A stretch of 64,000 nt of DNA from Stegostoma tigrinum (GCF_030684315.1 NC_081387.1:16337409-16401408); one strand, 5' to 3'. Shown: positions 606 to 64,000, counted from the first letter of the stretch. Numbers and translations are program-made. Notes: a model not told the origin generated them from the letters alone.

Positions 606-1062
606 GTATGTGATCAACCAGTCTCTTGCATGCAGAGACAGTGTTGTAAATAAATTTGTTACACAGTAGTTATAGCAGCCTATGACTCAGTTCGTCTCAG
701 TATCAGAAACTTGCAGGATCATCCCTTTAATTAACCCAAAAATCTACCCACTAAAAAAGCTAAATCTAATTCTCACTAATGTACACTAACATTTAGATAG
801 AAAGTGGAATGTTTTCAACAGGTTATTTGATTAGTGTAAAAAAATATTTAGTTATACTCCGCCCTTAAACAGCCAGTCATTTACTGGCTTGGCTCCAATG
901 CCACTCTCAGATTTCACGCTCCCTCTCACCAGAAACTATGCAACCCTTATGGTTCCTGAGTCTCTGTCCTGTGACTGGTTCTGAGACAAGTCCTTGTAGT
1001 AATAGCTGAATGTACGAATGTGTCCAATCAGTGTCTCTGTTAATGAGATGTGTATCTTGCAG

Positions 1063-1607
1063 CCAGAGAATTTCTGAAACTGGATCCTAAGACAGCACAT
1101 CCACGACTTATTCTGTCCGAGGACCTCATCAGTGTGATCGATGGTGAGAAACGTCGGGACTCTGCATTCATGCCCCATCGTTTTAACCACTGGCTCTGTG
1201 TTCTAGCCAACACTGGCTTCCTGTCAGGGCAACATTACTGGGATGTAATGCTGGGCAACAATACCGCTTGTGTCATTGGGGTTGTCAGCGAATCTGCTGA
1301 TCGGTCAATAACTAAACAGCTGACACCACAAGATGGCTACTGGGTGATTGAAATGGTCAATGGGAGCCTGGTCAATGCCATTGGCCCTGGTGCCAAGATC
1401 CTCCCTCTACGACGCAAGCCCCGTATCATCCGTGTCTACCTGAATTATGAGGAGGGGCAGCTGTCTTTCTATGATGCTGAAGACCTCTGTCCTATCTACA
1501 CCGTACGGGACAAGTTCACAGCAAAACTCTATCCCCTCTTCAACCCTCACCACCGTAAGGAAGGGAATTTGGAGTCACTGAGTATATGTAATGAGACGGA
1601 GTGCTAA
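1063..1607 (+). CDS. Terminal B30.2 (PRY-SPRY) exon of a TRIM-family E3 ligase-like gene
   Basis: Acceptor tcttgcag|cc at 1062/1063. Motifs LDPKTAHPRLILSED, RFNHWLCVLA..GF.SGQHYWDV, GYWVI, IRVYLNYEEGQLSFYDA and LYPLFNP. Stop TAA at 1605-1607. Upstream RING/B-box exons would lie outside the window. Confidence 0.95.
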
Positions 1608-4600: not shown

Positions 4601-6079
4601 TCTCTCCCTCTCTTCCCCCACCACCCAACAGATGCTGCCAGACCTGCTAAGTTCTTCGAGCAGTTTCTGACCTACAGTATCGGCTGCTCTTTGATTCATT
4701 TTAGTGCAGGTGCTTATCAAGTGACCTCTTCCAGACCAACAGCCATCCTCCTTCCATCCCTCTGTCCGTCATTTCCAGAAACTCCGAGAGATCTCAAGAG
4801 GCTCCACCTGGTTCAGAGACCAGGCTGCTCTCAGAATTGGTATACCGTTATTCAAGCCATGCAGACACTTTAGTCATCTTTGCAAGTGCTGGTTTCCCTC
4901 ATTTGAGCAGCACTTTTTGATTACTTGCTAAAATGTAGACAATAAAACGAGAGAGAGATTAGTCTTTTAGACCGAGACCACACCACCCCTCCAAATAGCA
5001 TCCCACCCAAACATGCGCCACTACCCTATCCCCGTAACCCTGCTTTCCCACGGCTAATTCACCTAACCTGCACATCTCTGGACACTGCGGGACAAATCAG
5101 TGTATGATAGAATACCACTCACCCACCCCAATTTACCTGCATGTGTGCAGCTCCAAAAACACTCAGTAAGGTCAATACCATCCAGAAGAAAACAGGCCAC
5201 TTGCCTGGCACCACATCTACAAATACCACTCCCTCCTCCACCAATGCTCAGGCGCAACAGGTTGTCCCCTTGTACAAGGTGCCCTGCAGAAATTCACCAA
5301 TGCTCGTGAGACAGTTGTATTCATGACTTAAATCCATGACCACATCCATCCAGGAGGAAAGGGAAGCAGAAACAGAGGAAACCCACCTCCGTCAAGTTCC
5401 CCTCCAAGCCACTCATCGTCCTGACTTGGAAATGTTTCAGACTCATTCACCATTGCTCGTTCAAACCCCTCCCTAACAACACTTTGGTTCTACTACGTTA
5501 CATACACAGCAGTATTTCAAAGAGGCAGCTCACCACCGTCACTACAAGGACAGCTAGGGGCGGGCAATAAATTCTGACTCAGACATCCACGCCCAGTGAA
5601 TTGAAAAGTTTAGTGAGGAGTGTTGAACCATCAAGAAAGCTTCAAAAAGCAATAATCCCCATTAACTGCAACTCACAACTGTTGATGCGAGAAGCACAAA
5701 ACGTGATGCCACCGCCCTCGTTATATTTTACCACTGTCCTTAGAGTCACAGAAATGTACAGCACAGATAGACCCTTCGGCCCAACTCGTCCATGCTGACC
5801 AGATACCCCAAATTACTCCAGTCCCATATTTAACCCATACCCCTCTAAAACCTTTCTATCCACATACCCATCCGTGTTCCTTTTCAGTAATGTATTTGTG
5901 CCTCCATTGCTTCCTCCAGCAGCTCAGTCCGTACACCAACGCCGCCCTCTGTAGGTGGGAAAAGTTACCCCTTTGGTACAAATTATCAACGGATAAAAAC
6001 AGGAATTACTGCAGTATGTCAGCAGTGACACTCACGAGAGTGGAAACATTGACGCTGTTTTTCCTCTCTCTCTCCGTCC

Positions 6080-9452: not shown

Positions 9453-9752
9453 CACAGCACGTGAAAGACAGCATCGTGGCTGTTACAGGTTCCTCCGTCC
9501 TACTTCCTGGAACAGATAAAGGATTTGGCAGTCTCCAGTGGGAATTCTCAAAGCCTGGCAAGATCCTTCCCATTTTGAATTACATTGGAACACATCAACA
9601 AACATATGATCAGTATAAGAATAGAGTTGAACTGAACAAATCAGATGGGACATTGTTACTGAAAGATGTGCGTGAGGGAGATACTGGCAGATACAAAATG
9701 ACAGTGGACTTAGACCTGATTAGGACCAGAATTGTCACTCTGATGGTGTTTG
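9453..9752 (+). CDS. Ig V-set exon without cysteines (CD2/SLAM/HEPACAM-type N domain)
   Basis: Acceptor tttgtttcag|c and donor ttg|gtaagt. 300 nt, phase 1-1. Encodes GSSVLLP, LQWEF, YKNRVEL, DGTLLLKDVREGDTGRYKM and IVTLMV. Confidence 0.9.
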
Positions 9753-9900
9753 GTAAGTATTAGGAGGATGCTTCCATTTGCACCAATACAAATGAAACAA
9801 TAGCAGGGTGGACTCAGCAGATGTTCTGATGCACTGTGTTTGAATAAGACATGTGGTAGCATCGCACTTTAGCAGATGTATTAGTTGCCTTGGTGAGTTA

Positions 9901-18135: not shown

Positions 18136-19654
18136 TATGTCACAGAGAGGTCACACCCAGCCACACCCCGGTCTGTTCCCAAGTCTACATAATTGCCATG
18201 TTGGGCCAAAAACACCTTGAGAACTAGGACATAAGCTGTACAACTAAGGAATAACAATTCACAGAACGTGCTCTATTATTACTAACTTTTCTTCCACGAA
18301 CGTTGAGTCGTGGCTGAGGATGGGAAACTGAATCTGCAACCTCTCAATCTCCGTCCTAAACTACTGCTCCATCTGAGCGGAAATTTAACATAATTCCCGA
18401 AGTTTAGCTAACAGATGTTTGCCGCATGGCCGTCACAGGAGCGGAGCCGAATGAGGCCGAACTGCCAATTCTCAAGTTGAAGTGGAAGTTTTTGTTTTGG
18501 GTTTACCGTGGAGGTGACCAGATGAGCTCGGTAGTCTCAGGGACGTTTCAGAATTTTGAAAAAAAATCTGCTGCTTTTACGTTACTATGGAAATGTTGAG
18601 ATCTGTCACTTTCGGGGACAACAAAAAAAGCAGTCCCTCCGTTCCCAAGAACTGCTGCATTTGTGAATGTCATTCAATACCATCTCCTCCAGGGCAATTA
18701 GGGAGGGATGTGTAAGAAATGCTGACCCACACCGTGCAGCCCACCTCCTATAGACAGTTTCAAACAATCTGGTCAGGTGGGTTAAGACACACGGCTGGAG
18801 CAGGTCGCCTTGAGCCCAGGGCTACCCTGATCCCGCGGCTCGTAAACACAAAACGCTGTTCGAAAAGACCCCAGCGCTGCGGTTATCCACATCTCGGACA
18901 CGCACTAGTTCAGACTTTACTCCAAGATTTAACCTCAGGGAGGGTTTCCATGAGAGAATGTTCATTGGGGCCGGGGTAGGGTGAGAGGATTCTCCGGGAA
19001 CACGCTAAACTTGAAGGCAAGATTTCCCCTGTAAATCCCATCCAATGCTACTCGCGAGCCAGTGTGTGAGGTGAGGATCGAGGATAAATTGAAGACGAAA
19101 TATAGTCGATTGCATGGTCTAAATTTATTGCAATATCAGTCTGGCAGTGTCTGAGTATCTTCTGAAGTTGTTCGGTCCCAACAACTCTCGAAATAATTGG
19201 AACTGTACGACCTCCCTGGGACACCAGCGTCTCCAGGTGAAGCTTATGTCATCTTGTCCCAGAGTCTCTGTCCCAGGCAGCAGAGCACACAGGCTCCAGG
19301 CAAACGGATCTCTCTGCTATTCCTCAGCCGCTTAGCGGGTGGGGGCGTGTAACAGGAATGTTCACGGTTCAGAGCGGACTGGCATCATTCCTTACCAATT
19401 CCCTCGGGAACACGCCGCTTGCTTCCCAGACGGCAGCGGAGTGCAGCTCCGTCATGTCTCTCCAGAAGCGAAGAGCAGCCAGGTGACGGCAGATTGTAAA
19501 CTCTTATCTGTCTGGTTGTGGACTGTTAAAGTCACATTCCCCTTTAGTAGCTCTGTCCACAGCGCCTGTATGAACTGCCGTCGATACACACCACTGTCAC
19601 TGGCCTGTAAATCCCGCAGACACAACGATCCAGGTTCTGGATCGAGGTGAGCTC

Positions 19655-20260
19655 GATAAGACCAGGAGCCGAAATTAGGCCAGTCGGCCCATCGAGTCTG
19701 CTCCGCCAATCAATTTTGGCTGATAACTTTCTCAATCCCATTCTCCCGCTTTCTCTCTGTATCTCTTGATTCCCTGCAACAATCAAAAACCTGCCCATCT
19801 CTGTCTTAAATATACTCAATGACCTGGCCTCCACAGCTTTCTGTGATAATGAATCCCATAGATTCACCACTCTCAGGCTGAAGACGTTTGTCCTTGTCTC
19901 CGTTTTAGAGGTTCTTGCCTTTCCTCTAAGGCTGTGTCCTTGAGGCCTAGTCTCTCCTGCTAGTGGAAATATCTTCCAATGTATGTTCTGTCCGGGCTGT
20001 TCAGTATTCTAAGACAATAAAATGTAAGGCTGGGTGAACACAGCAGGCCCAGCAGCATCTCAGGAGCACTGCTGGGCCTGCTGTGTTCATCCAGCCTCAC
20101 AGTTTATTGTCTTGGATTCTCCAGCATCTGCAGTTCCCATTGTCACTGTTCAGTATTCTGTAAGTTTCAATTAGATTCTCCCCTCATTCTTTGCATTCTT
20201 CTCATCCAATATAGACCCAGAGTCCTCAAACATTCCTCATATGTTAAGCTTTTCATTCCT
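19655..20260 (-). mobile_element. CR1-like 3' fragment containing a Penelope-derived inverted insertion (20011-20145)
   Basis: Translates as VVNLWDSLSQKAVEARSLSIFKTE. The inner insertion is flanked by a ctgttcagtattct duplication. Confidence 0.8.
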
Positions 20261-20271
20261 GGCTGTTCTGG

Positions 20272-21060
20272 GCTACAAATGGACATTGATAGGATGCAGA
20301 GCTGGGCTGAGAAGTGGCAGATGGAGTTTAATCCTGAAAAGTGTGAGGTGATTCATTTTGGAAGGACAAACTTGAAAGCAGAATACAAGGTTAACTGAAA
20401 GATTCTTGGCAGTGTGGAGGAGCAGAGGGATATTGGGGTTCATGTCCACAGTTCCCTGAAAGCTGTCACCCAGGTGGATAGAGTTGTAAAGAAGGCATAT
20501 GTTGTGTTTGCTTATATTAATAGAGGGATTGAGTTCAACTGCCGTGAAGTTATGCTCCAGCTGTACAAAACACTGGTTTGGCCACATCAGGAATATTGTG
20601 TCCAGTTCTCATTGCCTCATTGCGGGAAGGATAGGGAAACATTGGAAAAGATGCTGAGGAGATTTACCAGGATGTTGCCTGGAATGGAGAGAAGGTCTTA
20701 CCAGGAAAAATTGAGAGAAACAAGGCTTTTCTCTTTAGAATGACAAAGGATGAAAGGTGTACAAAATAATCAGAGCTATAGATGGAGTGGACAGCCAGAG
20801 ACGTTTTCCTAGGGTGGAGGTAGCTATTATGAGGGAGCATAGTTTTAAAGTGAGTGGAGGTAGATATAGGGGAGACTTCAGAGGTAGGTTCTTTACTCAG
20901 AGAGTGGTAGGGGCGTGGAATACATTGCCAGAGAGGGTAGTGGAATCGCCCTCATTAGGGGCATTTAAACGGCTATTAGATAGGCATATGGACCTTAGGT
21001 TTAGGATATAAGTTCGGCACAACTTTCGTGGGCCGAAGGGCCTGTACAGTGCTGTTCTAT
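20272..21060 (+). mobile_element. CR1 LINE 3' fragment (RT C-terminal region plus UTR)
   Basis: EEQRDIGVHVHSSLK, LYKTLVWPHQEYCVQF and FFTQRVVGAWNTLP. Confidence 0.92.
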
Positions 21061-22214
21061 GGATCCTTAAATTGGAGGAGGGTGTGCGTGTGGAATAGGA
21101 GACAGAGTGATTGACAGACTGGTTAACTGTCCCGTACACTTCTCTCTGAGAGACACTCAGGGAAATAGCATGGCTTCCATAGGGCTGCAATAAGATCAGT
21201 AACAACATCAGTATCGGAAAGGGATTGGGCACTTTAAATATTCCTGATCAAGTTCTCCACACGGGGCGGAGCAGTTGGGGGAATTGTTTGAAATCGCGTA
21301 ACGCTGTGAGCAGCAGTGGGAAGGTTAACATGAACACAACAGCCGGTTAACATCAAATTAGAAAACCGTGCGAAATACAGGGAGGCCGTTCGGCCCCATG
21401 CTGCGAGACGGCGCCATGTGTAGGTGGTCCCCACTAGTCCCGATCTCCCGCTCTGTTTCCTCCTTATGTCATGTTTAATCTTGATTCCCTTCCACTTTGG
21501 AAGTGTCTGCTGGCTTTGCTTCAACAGCGATCCTTTTTAAATTGAATTAGGAACATGGGACACTTTAATAGTTTCATAAATCCTAATTAATCCACCTCCC
21601 CACTCAGCCCCGCCACAAAAACGAAATCTGGGAGAATGGTCAAGGGAAATTCGAGGAAAATAGCATCGGTGCATCTAAGGGGCTAGGTGGGGGTGGGTTT
21701 GGTTGTGACCCCTTATATAAACGATCTTTAGCTAAAGTGAGTGTGTGGCGGGGCCTGAAGTATCGTTTCCGAGGTCATTTCCGAGCCAACCTGTTTTTTT
21801 TTTAAATCCTATTTTCTAGTTACTGTGTTCGGAGATATTATAACACAGCTTGAACCTGAGGTCACCTACTCCAGAGGTGGGGACACCACCACTTAACGGA
21901 GACGGCAAAAGCCCAGGAACAGAAAGAGGAGCTGTATTGTCCGGCACGCGGTTACCCAGAGCCGGAATATGACAGCCAAAGGAACTGGCTCAGATAACAA
22001 TCTCCTTCTGAAATTGGGCAGGATTGAATGTGCATCCGAAGTGAACGGGGCGATGTGGCTAAATTATTTCGCAAACAATTCAACGTTTAGAAATCAATCA
22101 TCTTTAATAAAGGAGTGTGGAAGTCAAGCCAGCCCGAGTGATAAATTTAATCTTCAGCCGACACATTTTGCAGAAAACATGCAAATGGCGATTGTTGAGG
22201 TCTGAGTCAAAGGT

Positions 22215-27429: not shown

Positions 27430-27599
27430 TCACTTCTGTCTACATCTCCGGCTCATATACCCGTACAAACAGGCCGCGAGCACACAGACCCCACCAAATC
27501 GGGCCAGAAGGAGAAGGGGAGCAATTTCCTTGTTGAGCTGTCCTCTGCTAGTCCCCGGCTGTTGGCAGCTTCGGGTCGGCGGAGTTGTCATCTCAATAT
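27430..27599 (-). CDS. Stalk, transmembrane (Arg-containing) and short-tail terminal exon of V-domain gene copy B
   Basis: Acceptor ttcttgttgtag|at at 27600/27599, phase 1 matching the V exon donor. Encodes DIEMTTPPTRSCQQPGTSRGQLNKEIAPLLLLARFGGVCVLAACLYGYMSRRCRQK*. Confidence 0.75.
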
Positions 27600-27699
27600 C
27601 TACAACAAGAATTTTGACTCTTAACAACAACCCTATTAGATTAATCATATTAAGTTAATAGTTACTCAGAAGGCTATTGCTGTTAGACAGCTTCCTTTG

Positions 27700-28012
27700 A
27701 AATGACGAGGACAGTGCAGTCATAGGTGACTTTATCACAAATCAAAGTGGCAGAACCAGCCACGAGGAAGAATTTGTAGCGTGCTTTCAGGACAGTTTCC
27801 CAGAACAATTTGTTATGGATGCAACCAGGGGTCAGGCTACTTTTTTTTTACTTCGGGTAATGTATAACGAGGCAGCTTTAATAAATGATCTCAGAGTGAA
27901 ATATCCTTTAGGGAACAATTATCATAACGTGATAGAATGTAGCATTTGGTCTGAGAGTGAGGCAAGTGGCTCAGAAACAACTGTGCTAGAGTGGAACGGA
28001 AAAGGAGTTTAG
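27700..28012 (+). mobile_element. CR1 endonuclease-region fragment inside the intron of copy B
   Basis: VIGDF, EEEFV.CF.DSF.EQFV..TRGQA and LINDLRVKYPLGNNYHNVIE, a decayed SDH motif. Confidence 0.65.
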
Positions 28013-28146
28013 CAAAATAAAAGGTTGATGAACCATAATAACAGATGGGTTGGATAATCTACTGCTTCTTCATTTTATCATCTTAATTAGTTCAAGAACG
28101 GAAAGAACAGCCAAGATTAAAGTGATACAAGATGGAGAGGTCTTAC

Positions 28147-28542
28147 CTGTCACATTACAGACTGTTAAAGTCACATTCTCTTTAACGGCTGTGTCCGCAC
28201 CGTCTGCATAAACTTGTATCACATACACGCCGCTGTCGCTGGGCTGTAAATCCCGCAAACACAACGATCCCGTCTCTGGGTCGACGTCAACTCGGTGTCG
28301 GTGGGAAGGAGCTGACATCTGGTGATCTGAGCAGTTATAACAGCATCTGGCAGCATCTGGAAAGCAGTTTGACCGGATCAGGCTCACAATTGGAGTGTCT
28401 CCGGGCAAAAAATACCACAGGATCCTTAAAGTGGAGGAGGGTGTGAGTGTGGAATAGGAGACGGAGAGACGGACAGACTGGCTCACTGACCCGTTCACTT
28501 CTCTCTGAGAGACACTCAGGGAAATAGCACTGTTTCCAGGGG
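28147..28542 (-). CDS. Ig V-set exon, copy B (HEPACAM/VSTM5/CD2-like N domain lacking the canonical B-F disulfide)
   Basis: Branch-point-like tactgat, acceptor ttgttacag|cc and donor acag|gtaaga. 396 nt, phase 1-1, open. Motifs VNGSVSQSVRLSVSY, ILWYF, RVDV, GSLCLRDLQPSDSGVYVIQV and VTLTV. Confidence 0.9.
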
Positions 28543-29761
28543 CTGTAACAAGATCACACACAACATCAGTATCGGAAAGGAATGGGCAGTTCAAATATTC
28601 CCAACGACGGCGGCAAATTATGAAACGTAAATAAATCATAAAATAAACGGAGCATCAACTGGCACGGAATTATTTTTATTGAGACCGAGAATCCTCGGGG
28701 GATCATCAAAACTTAGTTAGAAAGGCTTACTTCACTGAATGTAAAACAGCTTGAACGAAGGTATTTGACCTGAAACGCTATCTCGGTTTCTCTGTTACAC
28801 AGTGGAGTATTGCTGATTGAAATCAGACCGAGCACAAAGAGGCTGTTGGAGGTCTCTCACATTCAGACCCAACATTTTCTCTCTTCATGTCAGAATTCCA
28901 GCATGTACAGTGTTTTGCTTTTGTTTGCTAAGGACGCGATCGTGCTCAGATATCTTGTTCGAGGAGAGCAGTGAGAAGGAAAGTGGCTTAGCGCGATTGG
29001 AAGCGGACAGTAAACACGGACACAAAAAAACCCCAGAAAATGCTGGAAAATCTCAGCAGGTCTGGCAGCATCTGTGGAAAGAAATCAGAATTAACGCTTC
29101 GGATCCACTGACCCTTCTTCAGAACCCAGTAGTTATCACTGGGTGCTTTTTTTAACTGGAGGAACATGCACTCTCGGATTCCTCTTTCTTTTGTGAAAGT
29201 ATAACGGTGAGCAGAGTGCTGAGATTCTTCAAAATGGCATTCACCGGATGCTAAATCCAGAGACAACTGACGGATGAGTTTGCAGTTTGAATTGATTTGC
29301 CTCAGTCAGAAGAATGAGGAGCCTTACTATAAATTATCGGACGGCCTTGTGCAGGTAGTGGTTCTAGGGATACAGTGGTAGCTTAGCTACCTGCTTGTGT
29401 TGGGTGGATGGGTGGATGGGGAAACTGGTTTGAGTCTCAGTCAAACGAGCGAGCCATTTAACTTCGCAAATGAGGTCAATAAGCTCGGAACATATGCTGA
29501 TACTAAAAAATGTGTTATTTCATCCTACTTGGTGAATAATTAAAGAAGAGTTGAAGTAAAAGATTTTCACCCAGAGGAGCCTGGAACTCTAACACTAATA
29601 AAAAATAAGAACCACAGACGCCGGATATCAGAACCAAAAACAGAAGTTGCTGGAGAAACTCACAAGGTCCAGCAACTTCTGTAGAGAGAGAAAGCAGAAT
29701 TGACGGTTCAGTCTAGTGACCCCTCTTCAGAGCTCTTTAACTCAGTGTCTGGAAAGATGAT

Positions 29762-30427
29762 AATAGACAATAGACAATAGGTGCTGGAGTAGGCTATTCG
29801 GCCCTTCGAGCCAGCACCACCATTCATTATGATCATGGCTGATCATCCACAATCAGGATCCTGTTCCTGCCTTATCCCCATAACCCTTGATTCCACTATC
29901 TTTGAGAGCTCTATCTACCACTTTCTTTAAAGTGTCCAGAGAGTTGGCCTCCACTGCCTTCTGGGGCAGAGCATTCCATATACCCACCACTCTCTGGGTG
30001 AAGAAGTTTTTCCTCAACTCTGTTCTAAATGGCCTACCCCTTATTTTTAAACTGCGTCCTGTGGTTCTGGACTCACCCATCAGCAGAAACATGCTTCCTG
30101 CCTCCAAAGTGTCCAATCCCTTAATAATCTTATATGCCTCAATCAGATCTCCTCTCATCCTTTTAAATTCAAGTGTATACAAGCCCAGTCGCTCCAATCC
30201 TTCAACATATGATAGTCCCGCCATTCTGGGAATTGACCTCGTGAACCTACGCTGCACTCCCTCAATAGCAAGAATGTCCTTCCTCAAATTTGGAGACCAA
30301 AACTGCACACAATACTCCAGGTGCGGTCTCACCAGGGCCCTGTACAGCTGCAGAAGGACCTCTTTGCTCCTATACTCAATTCCTCTTCTTATGAAGGCCA
30401 GCATGCCATTAGCTTTCTTCACTGCCT
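29762..30427 (-). mobile_element. Young CR1 LINE 3' end with an uninterrupted ORF2 tail
   Basis: 193-aa ORF AVKKANGMLAFIRRGIEYRSKEVLLQLYRALVRPHLEYCVQFWSP...FFTQRVVGIWNALP and a (CTATTGT)n tail. Confidence 0.95.
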
Positions 30428-31876
30428 GAGGCATAAAATAATGTAAAATGTTTGAAGTGTTGCAATCTCTGAGGCCCCAGGCAAAACTATATATAGCTCT
30501 TTCTGACCCTCTCAGCCAACGGGCTCAACTGGATTCTTACTCTTAAAATTACTCATACTCTGAGTCTATGATGTGAAAGATGCAAGTCAACACCCAACCA
30601 TAGGATGATGGATTTATCCCAGAAGGGATGAGGGAACATTTTATACCTTAATATTTAAATCCAAATCTCTGAAGACTAGCCTATTCATTAAATCTCCCAG
30701 CTGAATTGGGTTTCAGGCAATCCTTTGTGCCATCTAAAATTCTAAGGCATCAGAACAAGAGTCGGCTGTTTGGCCCCTCAGACTACTCTGTCATTCAATA
30801 GGATCATGGCTCATTTCACATTTCTGCCCTTTCTCAACAACCCTTTGATTCCCCGACTAATCAAGAATCTATCTATCTCAGCCTTAAACATACACAAGGA
30901 CTCTGCCCAAAGGAGTTCCAAAGTCTCACAGCCCTCTGACAGAAGGAATTTCTCCTCATCGCAGTCTTAAATTGGCATCTATTCAGAGACTATGCCCTCT
31001 AGTTCAAAACTCTCCCATGAGGGGAAACATCTTCTCAGAATTTACCCAGTCAAGCCCCTTAAGAAGCCTATATATTTCAGTGAGATCCCACCCCCACCCC
31101 CGCCAGCCTTTGAAACATGGATTGGAGGGATATGTTGTGAGGAGGAAGCAGGACACTGGAGGCCCACTGGATGAGATGGTAAATCTCAATGACTTGTATC
31201 CAGCCATACTAACAGGATGAGAGAGTGGTGAAACTCAGCTCTGAGTGAAAACTGCCAGCCAGTCAGAACAGAGTCAAGGAGCATTTGATGGAGAATTGTT
31301 TTAATGCAAATATCAGTTAAAACACTTGCTGGAGACAGGGATAAAGTAATGGGTGAGAAGCCAGAAGATAGTGACCTAACAGTGATGATTTGTTTGCCGG
31401 CTCATATCTCCAACACCTCAGGAACTGAAGCACAAGCAATGAAATCAAATAAGATGGAGATGTGTTCTGTACTTATAATTGAGTGTGATAGCCTTTGGTG
31501 GTTGACAGTATCAGAAGTGCTAAAGCGATGTGTGTGATAACTTCAGCATTGTATCTAATGGACAATATTTTACTGATGACTGCCATGATTTTCATTTACA
31601 TATTACATACGCTTCGAAAGGACTGAGCAAGGAAAAAACATGTTATGATTAAACGTGTATAATATATATTCTATATATAGGATATGGAGATTAAACTAAT
31701 ACTCACCCCAGGCCCCTTTGTAACAGTACCATCCACTACCCCTCCAGATAGCAACGACAAACCACAGGTGAAGCTGCCAAACTGGACTATTTGACCCTTA
31801 ACTATTTCACAGTTGAAGCAATCCTTTTTTTTTCCCAAATGACCATTACATCTTGTAGTGACACCTAGTAAAGAAC

Positions 31877-32053
31877 CACTGAAGGATTGAAAATTCTCTG
31901 TGGACTTTGTTTCTGTTCTCCAATGGTCACTCAGTAACTTCATCCAACCTCTTATGTACAGACACAATCTGTACATAAGAGGTTGGATGAAGTTACTGAG
32001 TGACCATTGGAGAACAGAAACAAAGTCCACAGAGAATTTTCAATCCTTCAGTG
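31877..32053. repeat. Perfect inverted repeat, 86-bp arms with a 5-nt loop
   Basis: 31877-31962 is the exact reverse complement of 31968-32053. The loop is cacaa. Confidence 0.97.
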
Positions 32054-32069
32054 ATGGTAATCAAGCTCC

Positions 32070-32345
32070 CTCGCACACTCGCTCAGTAACTCTCTCCCCA
32101 GCATCTTGTGGACATATCTGTAAGATGTACATTATATCGGTAATGATTTTAACCACAGTCCCTCGCACACTGACCAGTAACACCCTCCCCAGTCCCTTGT
32201 CTATATAGCTGTAAGTCCATTATATCTATGGTAACATTAATCACACTCACTTAGTAAAGACTTCCCCAGTTCCTTGTGTATATGTCTGTAATGTTTACAT
32301 CACATTTTAATAACATTAATTACATTCACTCAGTAACTTCTTCGC
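32070..32345. repeat. Degenerate tandem repeat, about three units of ~80-90 bp
   Basis: Recurring cac(t)cagtaac..ccccag(t)ccttgt..tat..ctgtaa..cattat..taacattaat. Confidence 0.7.
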
Positions 32346-32529
32346 AAACCGCTTGTCTTGTTGAACACCCTTGTTTTGATCTCAATCCTGCTGCCTCAGA
32401 TTATCAAACAACTGCTCAGAGCAAGAAACATGTGAGAGTGACTGTATCTTAATTTTATTCCATTGTTTTTGATAGCTTAATGCATTTTCTTAGATGGCCA
32501 GATGGTTCAGACATGGCCTGACACATATG

Positions 32530-33300
32530 TGGAGCTCATGGACCTGAGCTCTAGTTACATTGAGGTTGTACAGGACATTGGTGAGGCCTCATCTTGAATA
32601 CAGCGCGCAGTTCTGGTCACCCTGTTATAGGAAGAATATTAGGCTTGAGAGGGTTTAGAAGAGATTTATCAGGATGTTGCCAGGAAGAGGAGGGTTTAAG
32701 TTATGGGGAGAGTCTGGGCAGGCTGGGACTTGTCTCACTGAAGGGGTGACCTTATAGAGATTTATAAAATCCTGCAGGATACAAGTAAGGTGAGTGGTAG
32801 GTGTCTTTTCCTTAGGGTGGGGGATTTCCAGATTTGAGGCTTTTTTTTAAAGTAAGGGTGAAACTTTAAATAAAAAAACATGAAGGGCAATTTTTCTTTT
32901 ACGGTTCCTGTTTGCAATGAGCTTGCAAAGGAAGTGATGGATGCAGATACAGTTAGAATGTTTGAACAACATTCGGATAAGTACAGGAATAGGAAAGGTT
33001 GGGAGGGATATAGGACAAGTGCAAGCAGGTGGGAGTAGTTTAGTGTGGGACGATGGTCGGTATGGACTGGTTGACCGAAGGATCTGCTGTATGACTCTCT
33101 GACTGTATAACTTGGGCCTAGAGGTAAGACCATAAGACCATAAGACATAGGAGTGGAAGTAAGGCCATTCAGCCCATCGAGTCCACTCCGCTATTTAAAT
33201 CATGGTTGATGGACATTTCAACTCCGCTTCCCTGCACTCTCCCCGTAGCCCTTGATTCCTTGTGAGATCAAAAATTTATCGATCTCAGCCTTGATAAGAA
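32530..33300. mobile_element. CR1 3' fragments (+ copy 32530-33105; - copy 33125-33295 with a (TCTTATGG)n tail)
   Basis: gtacaggacattggtgaggcctcatcttgaatacagcgcgcagttctgg, and a taagaccataagaccataagac tail. Confidence 0.8.
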
Positions 33301-33425
33301 CAGGTATGTACAGTTTACCATAGAACCACTGTACTTGTTTACTGACAAGAAATTAATTTGCAGCCAGATGACTGTGGAGCTTCCTTTTAATTAGATGCTG
33401 CCTCCTGAGCTAATTCCAGAGGAAT

Positions 33426-33514
33426 TTACAAACAGATGCTTGATGTTAGGATAATGCACAGGGTGGCACTTGGCTGCAATATATTCCCACTATCGCTCTT
33501 GAGATGAGCTGCTA
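33426..33514 (-). CDS. GPI-anchor-signal-like terminal exon of V-domain gene copy C
   Basis: Acceptor catttccttcag|ta at 33515/33514, phase 1 matching the V exon donor. Encodes VAAHLKSDSGNILQPSATLCIILTSSICL*: small-residue cluster SDSG, spacer, then a hydrophobic C-terminus with no cytoplasmic tail. Confidence 0.6.
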
Positions 33515-34147
33515 CTGAAGGAAATGGTCGCTTTTTAATCAAAGACATTACTGCTTTCACTCACTGGCCAGGCGTGTGGGACAGGAGAGGCAGAGTCACT
33601 TTGACCCTAGACCCACGACAATTCGGGTTTGAGCTTCAGAGCATGGGGTTTACTGGAGGTGCAGAACTAATGACTTTCTGAAGGGGAGTTCTGGCTAGTG
33701 CCCTTCGTTTTCTGATCTTTCAGCCAGAATTCCCCAGGCTAGCAGCTCCAGCAAGATTTGGAGTTTGACCTGAACGTTATTCCAGGCGTAGATTCAACCA
33801 TTCAAACATCCTCTCCGCTCCCCTCATGCCCCTTTACCCGGGATGCCCGTGTTTCTGGGTGAAGCATTTCTTCCTATGTCTCCAGTTCACACGTCAATAC
33901 CAGTAGTCCCCTGGCACTCAGAGCCCGTTAAAGATGTCCTCACAGAACAGGAGAGCGGCTCCCTGCACTCTATCGCTCAGAGCTGGTGGACCAAGAACAG
34001 GAATGTTCCCGCTTCAAAGCGGACTGGCATCTTTCCTTATCAATTCCCTCGGGGAGACAAGGCTTACGTCCCAGCGAGTGGGACATGCAGTCATGCTTCT
34101 CCATCAGCAAACAGCAACCAGCTCTGGGGCAGAATGTAAACTCTTAC

Positions 34148-34568
34148 CTCTCTCATCATAGACTGTTAAAGTCACATTCCCTTTAACGGCTGTGTCCGCA
34201 CCGTCTGCATAAACTTGTATCACATACACGCCGCTGTCGCTGGGCTGTAAATCCCGCAAACACAACGATCCCGTCTCTGGGTCGACGTCAACTCGGTGTC
34301 GGTGGGAAGGAGCTGACACCTGGTGATCTGAGCAGTTATAACGGCATTTGGCAGCATCTGGAGAGCAGTTTGATCGGATCAGGCTCACAATTGGAGTGTC
34401 TCCGGGCAAAAAATACCACAGGATCCTTAAAGTGGAGGAGGGTGTGAGTGTGGAATAGGAGACGGAGAGACGGACAGAATGGCTCACTGTCCCGTTCACT
34501 TCTCTCTGAGGGACACTCAGGGAAATAGCACGGCTTCCATAGGGCTGTAACAAGATCACACACAACAT
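34148..34568 (-). CDS. Ig V-set exon, copy C (near-identical to copy B)
   Basis: Open from ATG 34568 (MLCVILLQPYGSRA-ISLSVPQREVNGTV...) to donor agag|gtaaga at 34148/34147. The 5' boundary is uncertain: either this ATG or the cag acceptor at 34545. Confidence 0.85.
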
Positions 34569-35489
34569 CAGTATCGGAAAGGAACGAACAGTTTATAGTA
34601 ACAGATTTCTATGCGGGAAGTAGATTATTAAACATCTCACTCGTTTAAAAATCAGAAAACTCACACCGCATCATCAAAGAATACTTTTTTGTGCTGGGAC
34701 CGAGAGTGTGCGGTTTATCATTAATTGGAGACTAAAAAAACCCTGCAAATGTTGGAACCTAAGGTAGACAAACATGCCTGAAGAAGGGTAACGCCTGAAA
34801 CGTTCAGTAAACGACTTTCCTCTCGATGCTGCCTGGCCTGCTGTGTTCGCCCAGCCTCCTGTTTGTCTACCTTGGATTCCAGCATCTGCAGGGTTTTTTT
34901 TTGTGTCTTTAATCATTAATTAGAGACACACCGGAGATGAGGAAATACCAACAATTCAATGGATGCCAGGGGATCTGAAACCAAAACAGAAAATACTGGA
35001 GAAACACAGCAGGTCTGGCAGCGTATGTGAAGTGAGAGAAACGGAGTTAACATTTTGTGTCCACTGACCCTTCCTTAGGGAGATGAGAAACTTTGTCATT
35101 ACAGAGCATTACAAGAGAATGTAGAAGTCTCAACTTAGCACAGATAGGAATAAAACAAGTGAGGAAAATACAAGAGATGATAATTGTAAAGAGGCCATTT
35201 ATTTCTGCAACGGTATCTCGAAACGGCATGAAATGGACAACATGCAGAAGCGAACGAGAGCGCGGTGTAACTGATTATGTGTGCGTGTGTGATTCTGTAT
35301 AAAAGTCTGTGGTTATGGAAACTGTAAAACAGCAGAAATACGCCGATGGCAGAAAAAGGCAACATTTCACCCGTACATGCAATGACCGATATTCTATAGC
35401 TGGGCTCCATGATTTGCATCCAAACAATGTGCCTGGATTAAAAAAGATTGAGAGAAGTGAAAAGAAAACGATTGGACGGGGGGGTTACA

Positions 35490-54669: not shown

Positions 54670-57600
54670 CAGTGAGAGAGGGAACAGGCAGGCCAGAAGG
54701 AGGGAGAGCGGGAACAGGCAGCCCCGAGGCAGGGAGAGGGGGAACAGTCAGCCCTGAGGCAGGGAGAGCGGGAACAGTCAGCCCCGGGGCAGGGAGAGCG
54801 GGAACAGGCAGCTCTGAGGCAGGGACAGTGGGAACAGTCAGCCACGAGGCACGAAGAGCGGGAGCAGGCAGCTCCGAGGCATTGAGAATGGGAACAGGCA
54901 GCCATGAGACAGGCAGACCAGGAACAGGCAACCCTAGGACAGGGAGAGCAGGAACAGTCAGCCCCGAGGTAGGGAGAATGGAAACAGGCAGCCCCGAGGC
55001 AGGGAGAGCAGGAACAGTCAGCTCCGAGGCAGGGAGAGTGGGAACACGCAGCCCTGAGGCAGGGAGAGTGGGAACAGGCAGCCCTGAGGCAGGGAGAGCG
55101 GGAATAGTCAGCCCCGAGGCAGGGAGAGTGGGAACAGGCAGCCCTGAGGCAGGGAGAGAGGGAACACTCAGCCCTGAGGCAGGGAGAGTGGGAACAGGCA
55201 GCCCTGAGGCAGGGAGAGTGGGAACAGTCACCCCCGAGGCAGGGAGAATGGAAACAGGCAGCCGTGAGGCAGGGAGAGTGGGAACAGGCAGCCCTGTGGC
55301 AGGGAGAGTGGGAACAGGCAGCCCCAAGGCAGGGAGAGTGGGAACAGTCAGCCCCGAGGCAGGGAGAGCAGGAACAGTCAGCCCTGAGACAGGCAGAGCA
55401 GGAACAGGCAGCCCTGAGGCAGGGAGAGCAGGAACAGGCAGCCCTGAGGCAGCAAGAGTGGGATCAGGCAGCCCTGAGGCAGCGAGAGAGGGAACAGTCA
55501 GCCCGAAGAAAGGCAGAGTGGGAACAGTCAGCCCTAAGAAAGGCAGAGTGGGAACAGTCAGCTCTGAGGCAGGGAGAGCGGGAACAGTCAGCCCCGAGGC
55601 AGGGAGAGTGGGAACAGGCAGCCCTGAGACAGGCAGAGCAGGAACAGGCAGCCCTGAGGCAGGCAGAGCGGGAACAGTCAGCCCCGAGGCAGGGAGAGCG
55701 GGATCAGGCAGCCCTGAGGCAGCGAGAGTGGGAACACTCAGCCCCGAGGCAGGGGGAGTGGGAACAGGCAGCCCTAAGACAGGGAGAGTGGGAACAGTCA
55801 CCCTCGAGGCAGGGAGAATGGAAACAGGGAGCTGTGAGGCAGGGAGAGCGGGAACAGGCAGCCCTGAGGCAGGGAGAGTGGGAACAGTCAGCCCCGAGGC
55901 AGGGAGAGCGGGAACAGTCAGCCCCGAGGCAGGGAGAGCGGGAACGGGCAGCCCTAAGACAGGGGGAGTGGGAACAGGCAGCTCTGAGGCATTGAGAATG
56001 GGAACAGGCAGCCGTGAGACAGGCAGAGCAGGAACAGGCAACTCTGAGGCAGGGAGAGTGGGAACAGTCAGCCCCGAGGTAGGGAGAGCGGGAACAGTCA
56101 GCCCCGAGGCAGGGAGAGTGGGAATAGGCAGCCCTGAGGCAGGGAGAGCAGGAACAGTCAGCCCCGAGGCAGGGAGATCGGGAACAGGCAGCTCTGAGGC
56201 AGGGAGAGTGGGAACAGGCAGCCCTGAGGCAGGGAGAGAGGGAACAGGCAGCCCTAAGACAAGGGGAGTGGGAACAGTCAGCCCCGAGGCAGGGAGATCG
56301 GGAACAGGCAGCTCTGAGGCAGGGAGAATGGAAACAGGCAGCCCTGAGGCAGGGAGAGCAGGAACAGTCAGCCCCGAGACAGGGAGAACGGGAACAGGCC
56401 GCCCTGAGGCAGGGAGAGTGGGAACACTCAGCCCCGAGGCATGGAGAGAGGGAACAGGCAGCCCTAAGACAAGGGGAGTGGGAACAGTCAGCTCCGAGGC
56501 AGGGAGAGCGGGAACAGCCAGCCCCGAGGCAGAGAGAGTGAGAACAGACAGCCCTGAGACAGGGAGAGTGGGAACACTCAGCCCTGAGGCAGGGAGAATG
56601 GAAACAGGCAGCCCTGAGGCAGGGAGAACAGGAACAGTCAGCCCCGAGTCAGGGAGATCGGGAACAGTCAGCCCCGAGCCAGGGAGAGCGGGAACAGGCA
56701 GCCCTGAAGCAGGGAGAGTGGGAACCCTCAGCCCCGAGGCAGCGAGAGTGGGAACAGGCAGCCCTGAGGCAGGGAGAGTGGGAACACGCAACCCCGAGGC
56801 AGAGAGAGAGGGAACAGTCAGCCCTAAGAAAGGCAGAGTGGGAACAGTCAGCTCCGAGGCAGGGAGAGCGGGAACAGGCAGCCCTGAGGCAGGGAGAGAT
56901 GGAACAAGCAGCCCCAAGGCAGGGAGAGTTGGAACAGTCAGCCCCGAGGCAGGGAGAGAGGGAACAGTCAGCCCTGAGGCAGGGAGAGCAGGAACAGGCA
57001 GCCCTGAGGCAGGGAGAGTGGGAACAGGCAGCCCTAAGACAGGGAGAGTGGGAACAGTCAGCCCCGAGGCAGGGAGAATGGAAACAGGCAGCCCTGAGGC
57101 AGGGGGAGTGGGAACCGTCAGCCCCGATGCAGGGAGAATGGAAACAGGCAGCTCTGAGGCAGGGAGAGCAGGAACAGTCAACCCCGAGGCAGGGAGAGTG
57201 GGAACAGGCAGCCCTGAGGCAGGGAGAGCGGGAACACGCAGCCCTGAGGCATTGAGAATGGGCACAGGCAGCCGTGAGACAGGCAGACCAGGAACAGGCA
57301 ACCCTAGGACAGGGAGAGCAGGAACAGTCAGCCCAGAGGCAGGGAGAATGGAAACAGGCAGCCCCGAGGCAGGGAGAGCGGGAACAGTCAGCTCCGAGGC
57401 AGAGAGAGTGGGAACACTCAGCCCTGAGGCAGGGAGAGTGGGAACAGGCAGCCCCAAGGCAGGGAGAGTGGGAACAGTCATCCCCGAGGCACGGAGAGTG
57501 GGAACAGGCAGCCCTGAGGCAGGGAGAGTGGGAACAGGCAGCCCTGAGGCAGGGAGAGCGGGAACAGTCAGCCCCGAGGCAGGGAGAGTGGGAACAGGCA

Positions 57601-63600: not shown

Positions 63601-64000
63601 CTGAGGCAGGGAGAGTGGGAACAGTCAGCCCCGAGGCAGGGAGAATGGGAACAGGCAGCCCTGAGGCAGGGAGAGCGGGAACAGTCAGCCCCGAGCCAGG
63701 GAGAGCGGGAACAGGCAGCCCTGAAGCAGGGAGAGTGGGAACCCTCAGCCCCGAGGCAGCGAGAGTGGGAACAGGCAGCCCTGAGGCAGGGAGAGTGGGA
63801 ACACGCAACCCCGAGGCAGAGAGAGAGGGAACAGTCAGCCCTAAGAAAGGCAGAGTGGGAACAGTCAGCTCCGAGGCAGGGAGAGCAGGAACAGGCAGCC
63901 CTGAGGCAGGGAGAGTTGGAACAAGCAGCCCCAAGGCAGGGAGAGTTGGAACAGTCAGCCCCGAGGCAGGGAGAGAGGGAACAGTCAGCCCTGAGGCAGG
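54670..64000. repeat. 30-bp G/purine-rich minisatellite, more than 300 units, running off the window end
   Basis: Consensus GGAACAG(G/T)CAGCCC(C/T)GAGGCAGGGAGAG(T/C)G. Variant units recur in long blocks. Only three 1-nt deletions (~60612, ~62201, ~62330). Confidence 0.98.

What the first reader, a model, noticed from the sequence alone, without database searches (positions are those of the whole stretch)
27430..34568. Paired Ig receptors: near-identical V domain attached to an Arg-containing TM anchor in one gene and a GPI-type anchor in its neighbour
Seen: two tandem minus-strand V exons (28147-28542 and 34148-34544) that are ~97% identical, each followed 550-630 bp later by a different phase-matched terminal exon. 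Copy B ends EIAPLLLLARFGGVCVLAACLYGYM-SRRCRQK*, a TM with one Arg and a 7-aa tail without signalling motifs. Copy C ends AHLKSDSGNILQPSATLCIILTSSICL*, which fits an omega site, spacer and hydrophobic end. The ORF track does not link either terminal exon to its V exon, and the copy C exon is absent from the track. Established: a TM Arg with a short tail marks activating receptors that couple to FcR-gamma/CD3-zeta (NKp30, NKp46, LILRA, GPVI), and TM/GPI paralog pairs exist (CD16a/b, CEACAM3 versus CEACAM6). Inference: a lineage-specific activating receptor plus a GPI-anchored decoy or ligand sharing a binding surface, which I do not recognise as a named family.
Basis: partly seen in the sequence, partly recalled or inferred. 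Interest (0 to 1): 0.9.

Follow-up and report, generated by a model that had tools for sequence, protein, structure and literature searches.

The report
Shark paired-receptor cluster, mostly decayed copies
The two near-identical antibody-like exons are real and belong to an unnamed shark and ray family of paired inhibitory/activating surface receptors, but the membrane-spanning copy has a stop codon in its first exon and the proposed lipid-anchored partner has no support beyond a short open reading frame.

Summary
Observation partly confirmed. V exons B (28147-28542) and C (34148-34544), minus strand, are 96.2% identical. Identity is limited to the exon plus about 49 bp upstream and 6 bp downstream.

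B's terminal exon (27599-27430, TM with one Arg, 7-aa tail) is real. It matches the C-terminus of an epaulette-shark protein (E 3.8e-10). That protein's leader also matches an exon 2.8 kb upstream of V-B (31405-31330).

The V domain defines a shark/ray-wide family, all "uncharacterized" at NCBI. It has ITIM-tailed inhibitory members and Arg-TM, short-tailed members. The nearest tetrapod relatives are named CEACAM-like. B's true partner is the inhibitory zebra-shark LOC125446602, whose V is 98% identical. The scan placed a gene of this kind 38 kb beyond the window (s1-881650).

In this genome, B's leader carries an in-frame TAG. DNA contigs from 4 runs (2 samples) agree with it.

Copy C shares a +1 nt shift with the dead copy A. 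That shift breaks the family's phase-1 leader junction. C has no family leader, TM or tail exon. Its "GPI" exon has no homolog, and no RNA data exist.

Verdict: a CEACAM-like paired-receptor cluster with exon-limited gene conversion. B is probably a recently disabled activating gene, and C and A are relics. The TM/GPI pairing is unsupported (about 8%). The scan noted a similar paired design elsewhere in this genome (s1-881482).

The parts
31330..31405 (-). Gene B exon 1 (leader). ATG at 31405, 25 codons plus 1 nt, phase-1 end. The donor is a non-canonical A|GCAAGT (GC donor).
   Evidence: Smith-Waterman score 65 against the leader of Hemiscyllium XP_060706748 (P0151). The next best score anywhere in the six frames of the window was 46, from a sliding window overlapping the same exon; the next best at any other locus was 41. 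Sequence and donor read.
31376..31378 (-). In-frame TAG at codon 10 of B's leader. The Hemiscyllium ortholog has Gln at this position. There is no downstream in-frame ATG in the exon.
   Evidence: Translation. Genomic contigs of 4 runs from 2 samples span 31091-31906, and their only difference from the window is at 31833.
28147..28542 (-). Gene B exon 2: V-set domain lacking the canonical Cys pair. Phase 1 at both ends.
   Evidence: Pfam V-set E 1.4e-10. 98% identical to the V of Stegostoma LOC125446602. AlphaFold2 model pLDDT 90.
27430..27599 (-). Gene B exon 3: stalk, TM with one Arg, 7-aa tail, TGA stop.
   Evidence: tblastn against P0009 residues 141-201, E 3.8e-10, with the same V|D junction. 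Best 21-aa hydrophobic window scores 2.02. The Arg lies 3 positions from the Arg column shared by three other species.
34148..34544 (-). Copy C V exon. The ORF is intact, but the exon starts with one extra nucleotide relative to B, so it sits in phase 0 after the conserved AG.
   Evidence: The same extra base is present in copy A.
34142..34593 (-). Tract of 95.6% identity between C and B (B side 28141-28591). Identity ends about 49 bp upstream and 6 bp downstream of the exon, and the flanks do not align. This is the signature of exon-limited gene conversion.
   Evidence: Within the exon there are 12 non-synonymous and 1 synonymous differences.
34566..34568 (-). ATG inside the conserved intron end. 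It is in frame with V only in copies C and A, and would give a 14-aa marginal signal-like start. Weak Kozak context (C at -3, T at +4).
33426..33514 (-). Candidate terminal ORF of C (28-29 aa, Ser/Asp/Ser then spacer then 13-aa hydrophobic end). ATTAAA lies 35 nt after the stop. Unsupported as an exon.
   Evidence: ORF and acceptor. Single-copy DNA. No homolog.
19509..21184 (-). Copy A: a dead V exon. The 5' part is 21184-21061 and the 3' part is 19667-19509, split by about 1.4 kb of inserted repeat DNA. The donor is mutated to AT. Its downstream intron is homologous to C's.

Best explanation
The region is part of a cluster of a shark- and ray-wide, so far unnamed family of single-V-domain paired immune receptors. 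The V domain is CEACAM/CD2-like and lacks the canonical disulfide.

Family members come in two forms. Inhibitory members have an uncharged TM and a tail with an ITIM (LTYSLLQW type) plus a second Tyr motif. Activating-type members have an Arg in the outer half of the TM and a tail of a few residues, and presumably signal through an acidic-TM ITAM adaptor.

Copy B is a three-exon activating-type gene (leader 31405-31330, V 28542-28147, TM exon 27599-27430). Its V exon is kept about 98% identical to that of the neighbouring inhibitory gene (zebra-shark LOC125446602) by gene conversion limited to the exon. In this genome B is probably a recent null, because its leader exon holds an in-frame TAG and has a GC instead of GT donor.

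Copy C and the TE-disrupted copy A are relics of an older duplicate lineage. They share a +1 nt shift at the start of the V exon that breaks the phase-1 leader junction. C's V looks intact because it was partly overwritten by the same conversion process. The short ORF read as a GPI signal is most likely a chance ORF.

Shown: exon homologies, frames, the TAG, the conversion tract and the family's two forms. Inferred: adaptor coupling, the null status of B, the non-coding status of C, and the CEACAM affiliation.
For: - A family exists. phmmer found 285 proteins at E<=1e-3. The single-V hits whose names were looked up come from 9 shark, skate and ray species, all named 'uncharacterized'.
- Two tail types are seen among these proteins.
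- All three exons of B match the Hemiscyllium LOC132832679 products: leader score 65, V 62%, TM exon E 3.8e-10 with the same junction.
- An Arg-TM is present in four species.
- The inhibitory partner's V is 98% identical to B. A V-exon variant of the partner's type (Ser at position 61) appears in genomic contigs of the same organism.
- Identity is confined to the exon plus splice regions. Xenopus CEACAM paired receptors show the same pattern (PMC5112662).
- The TAG is present in contigs of 4 runs from 2 samples.
- No protein with B's or C's V plus these tails turned up in the word-indexed search of the 5.8-billion-protein database.
- C and A share the extra base. A is clearly dead.
- No second family-type leader lies anywhere in the window. 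No plausible phase-0 leader lies within 11 kb upstream of C. No family TM or tail exon lies downstream of C or A.
- CEACAM link: the nearest tetrapod hits are named CEACAM5-like and CEACAM3-like. The newt protein hits only CEACAM N domains in PDB.
Against: - No RNA data exist for any junction.
- An undetected alternative first exon could rescue B.
- B's V and TM exons have intact ORFs.
- C's V ORF and GT donor are intact.
- C has an in-frame ATG with a minimal hydrophobic start that is also in frame in A.
- C's terminal ORF passes a crude GPI-signal filter that only 0.5% of window ORFs pass, and it is followed by ATTAAA.
- Single-IgV GPI-anchored CEACAMs are predicted in Xenopus.
- The 12:1 non-synonymous to synonymous excess could reflect selection rather than decay, although by my own hand binomial estimate, not a tool result, it is not significant (p about 0.13; counts).
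- The CEACAM affiliation is not decisive. The family profile scores JAML and B7-H3 above CEACAM6, and Foldseek gives only generic V-set neighbours.
Confidence: 0.6

Rival explanations
1. One reading: B is a working activating receptor, and C is a working GPI-anchored decoy or ligand with nearly the same binding surface.
For: - Both terminal ORFs are phase-matched.
- C's tail has small residues, then a spacer, then a 13-aa hydrophobic end, and passes a filter that 0.5% of ORFs pass.
- ATTAAA lies 35 nt after the stop.
- C's V ORF and donor are intact.
- GPI and TM single-IgV members are predicted in Xenopus CEACAM families.
Against: - B's leader has a TAG, confirmed in DNA of 2 samples.
- C is out of phase with the family leader and has no leader exon. 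Its only possible start is a 14-aa marginal signal from an intronic ATG in poor context.
- The GPI ORF has no homolog in the family or beside copy A.
- C shares its frame shift with a dead copy.
- No GPI-type member is seen among the fetched family proteins.
Confidence: 0.08
2. B is functional and C and A are relics. B would be transcribed from an unrecognised alternative first exon, or the TAG is a private or rare allele, so the activating/inhibitory pair is active in zebra sharks.
For: - The V and TM exons are open and splice sites are present.
- The V is kept 98% like the inhibitory V.
- The lesion is a single CAG-to-TAG change.
- The ortholog is intact in Hemiscyllium.
- Activating members of paired families are often polymorphic nulls (general knowledge).
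Against: - The TAG is seen without alternative in contigs of 4 runs from 2 samples.
- Only one family-type leader lies in the window.
- The donor is GC.
- No B-type protein is present in the databases.
- Gene conversion alone can keep a dead V exon similar.
Confidence: 0.2
3. C is expressed in some other form. For example, it could be a secreted single-V protein, an extra V exon of a multi-V transcript, or a silent donor sequence for gene conversion into B and the inhibitory gene.
For: - Multi-V relatives exist in newt and birds.
- V-C's phase-1 donor would join V-B's acceptor in frame, as read directly from the sequence.
- C retains residues shared with Hemiscyllium (Arg 67, Val 75) while its flanks are B-like, so the exon is a mosaic.
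Against: - C's 5' end is phase 0 with no leader.
- B's own leader lies between C and B.
- No elasmobranch relative with a tandem-V architecture was examined closely.
- The donor role is inference only.
Confidence: 0.1

Closest known systems
CEACAM1-related paired receptors (mammals; Xenopus ceacam301/303 and others)
   Same: - The N-terminal IgV lacks the canonical disulfide.
- Inhibitory members carry an ITIM-type tail.
- Paralogs with near-identical N exons are kept alike by gene conversion restricted to the exon and splice sites (PMC5112662).
- The family holds many pseudogenes.
- The nearest tetrapod hits of the shark V are named CEACAM-like, and one of them hits only CEACAM N domains in PDB.
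   Different: - CEACAM activating partners carry ITAM or ITAM-like motifs in their own tails. Here the activating type has a TM Arg and almost no tail.
- There are no IgC exons.
- The V has a Cys-rich C'-C'' hairpin.
- The second Tyr motif (ETIYAFP, VIYTAPRK) does not fit TxYxx[VI].
- Profile and fold searches do not single out CEACAM.
- Synteny was not tested.
Adaptor-coupled paired Ig receptors (KIR2DS/3DS, LILRA, PIR-A, SIRP-beta, NKp46, GPVI)
   Same: An activating form with a basic residue in the TM and a short, motif-free tail. It is paired with an ITIM-bearing form that has a near-identical ectodomain. Activating copies are often null (general knowledge).
   Different: Those ectodomains are C2 or I-set, or V with the canonical disulfide, and are unrelated in sequence. 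The adaptor in sharks is unknown; a 2014 survey found no FcR-gamma homolog in the shark data then available (PMC4016189).
GPI-anchored CEACAMs (primate CEACAM5-8; predicted single-IgV GPI Ceacams in Xenopus)
   Same: This is the architecture proposed for copy C: one CEACAM-like V on a GPI anchor beside TM paralogs.
   Different: In primates the GPI signal derives from the TM exon. C's ORF shows no similarity to any family TM exon, and C lacks a usable leader.
CD2/SLAM family (CD48, CD58, 2B4)
   Same: The V lacks the canonical disulfide, and the family has both GPI and TM members. A separate CD48-like V exon lies in the same window at 9461-9763 on the plus strand.
   Different: CD2/SLAM members have a V plus a C2 domain, and tails with several TxYxx[VI] switch motifs. 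The family here has a single V and an ITIM. CD48 is only a weak hit of the family profile (3.8e-5).

Membership tests
Paired activating/inhibitory Ig-superfamily receptors (functional class) | Paralogs with near-identical ligand-binding domains | tested here: met
   V-B versus V-C is 96.2% at nucleotide level. V-B versus the inhibitory LOC125446602 V is 98% at protein level.
Paired activating/inhibitory Ig-superfamily receptors (functional class) | One partner with a cytoplasmic ITIM | tested here: met
   P0156, P0007, P0011, P0157 and P0158 carry [LI]TYS[LFM]LQW, and the ray proteins carry the variants ETVYSTLQF, ITYTLLQL and ITYCLLQL. The gene lies outside this window, and no such exon is present in the window.
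Paired activating/inhibitory Ig-superfamily receptors (functional class) | The other partner with a basic TM residue and a short tail | tested here: met
   B's terminal exon has one Arg in a 21-aa hydrophobic window and a 7-aa tail. Homologs in three other species have an Arg in one shared column, 3 positions from B's.
Paired activating/inhibitory Ig-superfamily receptors (functional class) | Physical association with an ITAM adaptor; expression of both partners | not testable with these tools
   No RNA runs hold this DNA.
CEACAM family | N-terminal IgV-like domain without the canonical B-F disulfide | tested here: met
   The sequence reads L-S-V on strand B and Y-V-I on strand F, where V-set domains have L-x-C and Y-x-C. 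The fold is V-set, pLDDT 90.
CEACAM family | Closest sequence relationship to CEACAM N domains | tested here: inconclusive
   The nearest tetrapod hits are named CEACAM5-like and CEACAM3-like. The newt relative hits only CEACAMs in PDB. However, the family profile ranks JAML and B7-H3 above CEACAM6 at 1.8e-7, and Foldseek is generic.
CEACAM family | CEACAM1-type tail with an ITIM plus an ITSM (TxYxx[VI]) | tested here: inconclusive
   An ITIM is present. The second motif is ETIYAFP, ETIYALA or VIYTAPR, which does not fit TxYxx[VI].
CEACAM family | Location in the conserved CEACAM gene neighbourhood | not testable with these tools
   The window holds only a PRY/SPRY exon and a CD48-like V exon as neighbours.
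GPI-anchored protein (copy C) | N-terminal ER signal peptide | tested here: inconclusive
   No leader exon was found. The only candidate is a 14-aa start from an intronic ATG, with a 6-residue hydrophobic core and poor Kozak context. SignalP was not available.
GPI-anchored protein (copy C) | C-terminal omega site, spacer and hydrophobic tail | tested here: inconclusive
   The peptide passes a home-made filter that 7 of 1454 ORFs pass, but the thresholds were chosen after seeing it. NetGPI, PredGPI and big-PI were not available.
GPI-anchored protein (copy C) | The exon is actually spliced to the V exon | not testable with these tools
   Only genomic DNA runs exist for this stretch.
CD2/SLAM family | V domain followed by a C2 domain | tested here: not met
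   All single-V family proteins go from V directly to stalk and TM. No Ig exon lies between V-B and its TM exon.

The most novel reading that the evidence does not exclude
Copy C is a working gene that acquired a new start codon from the end of its former intron and a new terminal exon encoding a GPI signal. That would give a lipid-anchored, signalling-dead copy of the binding domain of an inhibitory/activating receptor pair. It would be an early, independent invention in cartilaginous fish of the GPI decoy design known from primate CEACAMs.
Probability: 0.08. Interest if true: 0.65.

Novelty: new member of a known kind. Interest (0 to 1): 0.35.

Why it matters
Paired inhibitory/activating receptors with binding domains kept alike by gene conversion mark host-pathogen arms races. 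They are well described in mammals and frogs.

This cluster shows the same design in sharks and rays, on a CEACAM/CD2-like V domain. I found no paper describing the family, and NCBI lists all its members as uncharacterized.

The activating form uses a TM arginine rather than an ITAM in its own tail. That implies an acidic-TM adaptor in a lineage where FcR-gamma was once reported missing.

For this particular locus the message is more sober. The copies in the window look like a recent null and two relics, and the proposed TM/GPI pairing should not be carried forward without transcript evidence.

Tried and rejected
- The search for homologous proteins with V-B alone found nothing, because of length and word limits. 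The exhaustive HMMER search then found the family.
The loci of LOC125446602 and of the Hemiscyllium ortholog could therefore not be fetched, and synteny and ortholog exon structure remain untested.
- The look-up of sequencing runs gave no RNA run.
- Read laying showed the four listed runs are genomic DNA, with even depth over intergenic sequence. No splice junction, start or end could be tested.
- PDB sequence search with V-B alone gave only generic V-set hits. Foldseek on a pLDDT-90 model and the ESM Atlas likewise named no family.
- Rfam found nothing in 26-36 kb.
- A search for a leader for C found no family-like leader and no phase-0 candidate with a good donor.
- tblastn found no family TM or ITIM exons downstream of C or A.
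- NKp30, NITR and CD2/SLAM memberships were considered and set aside, on the canonical Cys pair or domain count.
- Exons were searched one by one by reference.
- Papers searched gave no description of this family in cartilaginous fish beyond a skate EST called a CEA homolog (PMC4079198).


Full report
**1. What is in the sequence**

The minus strand between 27.4 and 34.6 kb holds two V-set exons, B (28147-28542) and C (34148-34544). Pfam V-set scores are E 1.4e-10 and 7.5e-10. The exons are 96.2% identical over 392 nt and 92% identical as protein.

The similarity is sharply bounded. It runs for 452 bp at 95.6%, from about 49 bp upstream of the acceptor to 6 bp past the donor. The flanking introns cannot be aligned.

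Both donors are GT in phase 1.

Its V exon (21184-21061 plus 19667-19509) is split by about 1.4 kb of inserted repeat DNA, and its donor has become AT. Its downstream intron is homologous to C's as far as 33996, but not beyond.

**2. The family**

A word-based protein search with V-B found nothing. An exhaustive phmmer search of 1.84 billion representatives found 285 proteins at E<=1e-3.

The single-V hits whose names were looked up come from these species:
- Stegostoma tigrinum
- Hemiscyllium ocellatum
- Scyliorhinus canicula
- Mustelus asterias
- Hemitrygon akajei
- Pristis pectinata
- Leucoraja erinacea
- Mobula hypostoma
- Narcine bancroftii

Scyliorhinus torazame was added by a further search. 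All are named "uncharacterized protein".

Their sequences show two forms:
- **Inhibitory form:** V, Ser/Thr-rich stalk, uncharged TM, and a tail with an ITIM ([LI]TYS[LFM]LQW in sharks, with variants such as ETVYSTLQF in rays) and a second Tyr motif about 20-25 residues later (ETIYAFPQKV, VIYTAPRKV).
- **Activating-type form:** V, a short stalk, a TM with one Arg, and a tail of a few residues. Examples are Hemiscyllium LOC132832679, Scyliorhinus LOC119976513 and Leucoraja LOC129716097.

The best hit, Stegostoma LOC125446602 (isoforms X1 and X2), is of the inhibitory form. Its V is 98% identical to V-B.

Genomic contigs of the organism that holds this window include a V-exon variant matching that protein's Ser 61, which is absent from B and C (34361 G>A). 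Depth over V-C is 2-3 times the single-copy level. So a third near-identical V exon exists in the same genome.

This agrees with an earlier scan note of an inhibitory single-IgV gene 38 kb beyond the window (s1-881650) and with another agent's "zebra shark" identification (s1-881482).

**3. Copy B**

All three coding parts of the Hemiscyllium activating-type protein have counterparts here in the right order and strand:
- Its C-terminal 61 residues match 27603-27421 (tblastn E 3.8e-10).
- Its leader matches 31405-31330, 2.8 kb upstream of V-B, with Smith-Waterman score 65. The next best score at any other locus in the window's six frames was 41.

The leader exon ends in phase 1, as V-B requires. 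It has two defects, however:
- Codon 10 is TAG where the ortholog has Gln, and no ATG follows it.
- The donor is A|GCAAGT, a GC donor.

Short-read genomic contigs from four runs (two samples) cover 31091-31906. Their only difference from the window is at 31833, so the TAG is not an assembly error.

No protein carrying B's V with this TM exon turned up in the word-indexed search of the 5.8-billion-protein database, which returned only LOC125446602 for this species.

B's TM window scores 2.02 on the Kyte-Doolittle scale. Its Arg lies three positions from the Arg column shared by the three other species. B's tail also ends five residues earlier than in Hemiscyllium, through a TGA where the ortholog has Cys.

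I conclude that B is a genuine activating-type member that is probably a recent null in this genome. "Null" is an inference, because an unseen alternative first exon cannot be excluded without RNA data.

**4. Copy C**

The start of V-C differs from V-B in a 12-nt patch that contains one extra base. After the shared AG, V-B is in phase 1, like every family protein whose leader junction can be read. V-C is in phase 0.

The dead copy A has the same patch and the same extra base. The shift therefore belongs to the A/C lineage. A phase-1 leader spliced to C would run into a stop after 68 codons.

Further evidence bearing on C:
- No second family-type leader exists anywhere in the window.
- A scan of 11 kb upstream found no phase-0 leader candidate with a good donor.
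- No family TM or tail exon lies downstream of C or A.
- The extra base puts an ATG of the conserved intron end (34568) in frame, in both C and A. This gives a 14-residue start with a six-residue hydrophobic core, in poor Kozak context. That is possible as a signal peptide, but marginal.

The "GPI" ORF (33514-33426) has features on both sides.

Points in its favour:
- It has a fair acceptor.
- It has a Ser-Asp-Ser stretch, a 7-residue spacer and a 13-residue hydrophobic end.
- ATTAAA lies 35 nt after the stop.
- It lies in single-copy DNA.
- It passes a crude GPI filter that only 7 of 1454 window ORFs pass.

Points against:
- The filter was tuned after seeing the peptide. The expectation is roughly 0.07 such ORFs within 1 kb and 0.36 before the next gene.
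- 141 of 406 downstream AGs open phase-1 ORFs of 20 aa or more.
- The ORF has no similarity to any of the 169 fetched proteins, unlike B's exon in the same test.
- The homology between C and A stops before it.

**5. Sequence differences between B and C**

B and C differ by 12 non-synonymous and 1 synonymous changes. By my own hand binomial estimate, which is not a tool result, this ratio is not significantly different from neutral (p about 0.13; counts).

At three of the central differences, C keeps the residues seen in Hemiscyllium (Ser 60, Arg 67, Val 75). At two of these (Cys 67, Met 75), B and the inhibitory gene share derived residues. C is therefore a mosaic of an older copy and converted sequence, not a fresh duplicate.

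I put about 70% on C being a non-coding relic and about 8% on the GPI reading.

**6. Comparison with known families**

The V domain has Val and Ile where V-set domains carry the canonical cysteines, and an invariant Cys in a long C'-C'' hairpin.

Evidence pointing towards CEACAM:
- The nearest non-elasmobranch relatives are bird and newt proteins named CEACAM5-like and CEACAM3-like.
- The newt protein hits only CEACAM N domains in PDB.

Evidence that leaves the affiliation open:
- V-B alone and the family profile give JAML, B7-H3, CEACAM6, CEACAM7 and CD48 in mixed order.
- Foldseek and the Atlas give only generic V-set neighbours.

CEACAM affiliation is therefore likely but not shown.

The literature describes the same exon-limited conversion between inhibitory and activating CEACAM paralogs in Xenopus. 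It also predicts single-IgV TM, GPI and secreted members there (PMC5112662). CEA homologs are reported in cartilaginous fish only as a skate EST (PMC4079198). I found no mention of charged-TM activating CEACAMs and no description of this shark family.

A 2014 survey found no FcR-gamma homolog in the shark data then available (PMC4016189). The adaptor for the Arg-TM form is therefore open.

**7. Verdict**

It is unproven for C's terminal exon.

It is wrong on two points. The partner is an ITIM receptor, not a GPI form. The two copies in the window look disabled or vestigial.

Nothing here is a new kind of system. It is an undescribed member of the paired Ig-receptor kind, with CEACAM-like features and adaptor-type activation, conserved across elasmobranchs.

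All RNA-level claims remain untested.

Noticed in passing
window 9461-9763 (+): A separate V-set exon without the canonical cysteines. Its best PDB match is CD48, over nearly its whole length (E 2.9e-5). This suggests a CD2/SLAM-like gene on the opposite strand of the same cluster.
   Followed up: partly
window 1050-1607 (+): An open exon encoding a PRY/SPRY (B30.2) domain (Pfam SPRY E 7.7e-18, PRY E 5.6e-16), as found at the end of TRIM or butyrophilin-type genes.
   Followed up: partly
window 31877-32053: A perfect 86-nt inverted repeat with a 5-nt loop, inside intron 1 of gene B. It is the same size as a hairpin element the scan noted elsewhere in this genome (s1-881804). No Rfam family reached threshold here.
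   Followed up: partly
window 54670-64000: A satellite with a 30-bp unit and about 311 copies at 81% match. It runs to the end of the window and creates very long artificial ORFs on both strands.
   Followed up: partly
window 19509-21184 (-): Copy A of the V exon is a pseudogene, split by about 1.4 kb of repeat DNA with an AT donor. Its 5' half is about 89% and its 3' half about 77% identical to B and C, which points to older, partial conversion events.
   Followed up: yes
Stegostoma LOC125446602 isoforms (P0003, P0156), outside the window: The last about 35 residues of both annotated isoforms resemble a repeat-derived peptide found at several places in this window (for example 29075-29025 and 4622-4669). 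The annotated last exon may therefore be spurious, and the true second Tyr motif may be missing from the model. Isoform X2 skips the TM exon.
   Followed up: no
V exons B and C, codons 56-75: An invariant Cys (position 59) and a near-invariant Cys in YNCSD sit in a long predicted C'-C'' hairpin. This is a likely replacement disulfide, also seen in the bird relatives (NCS...NCSA).
   Followed up: partly
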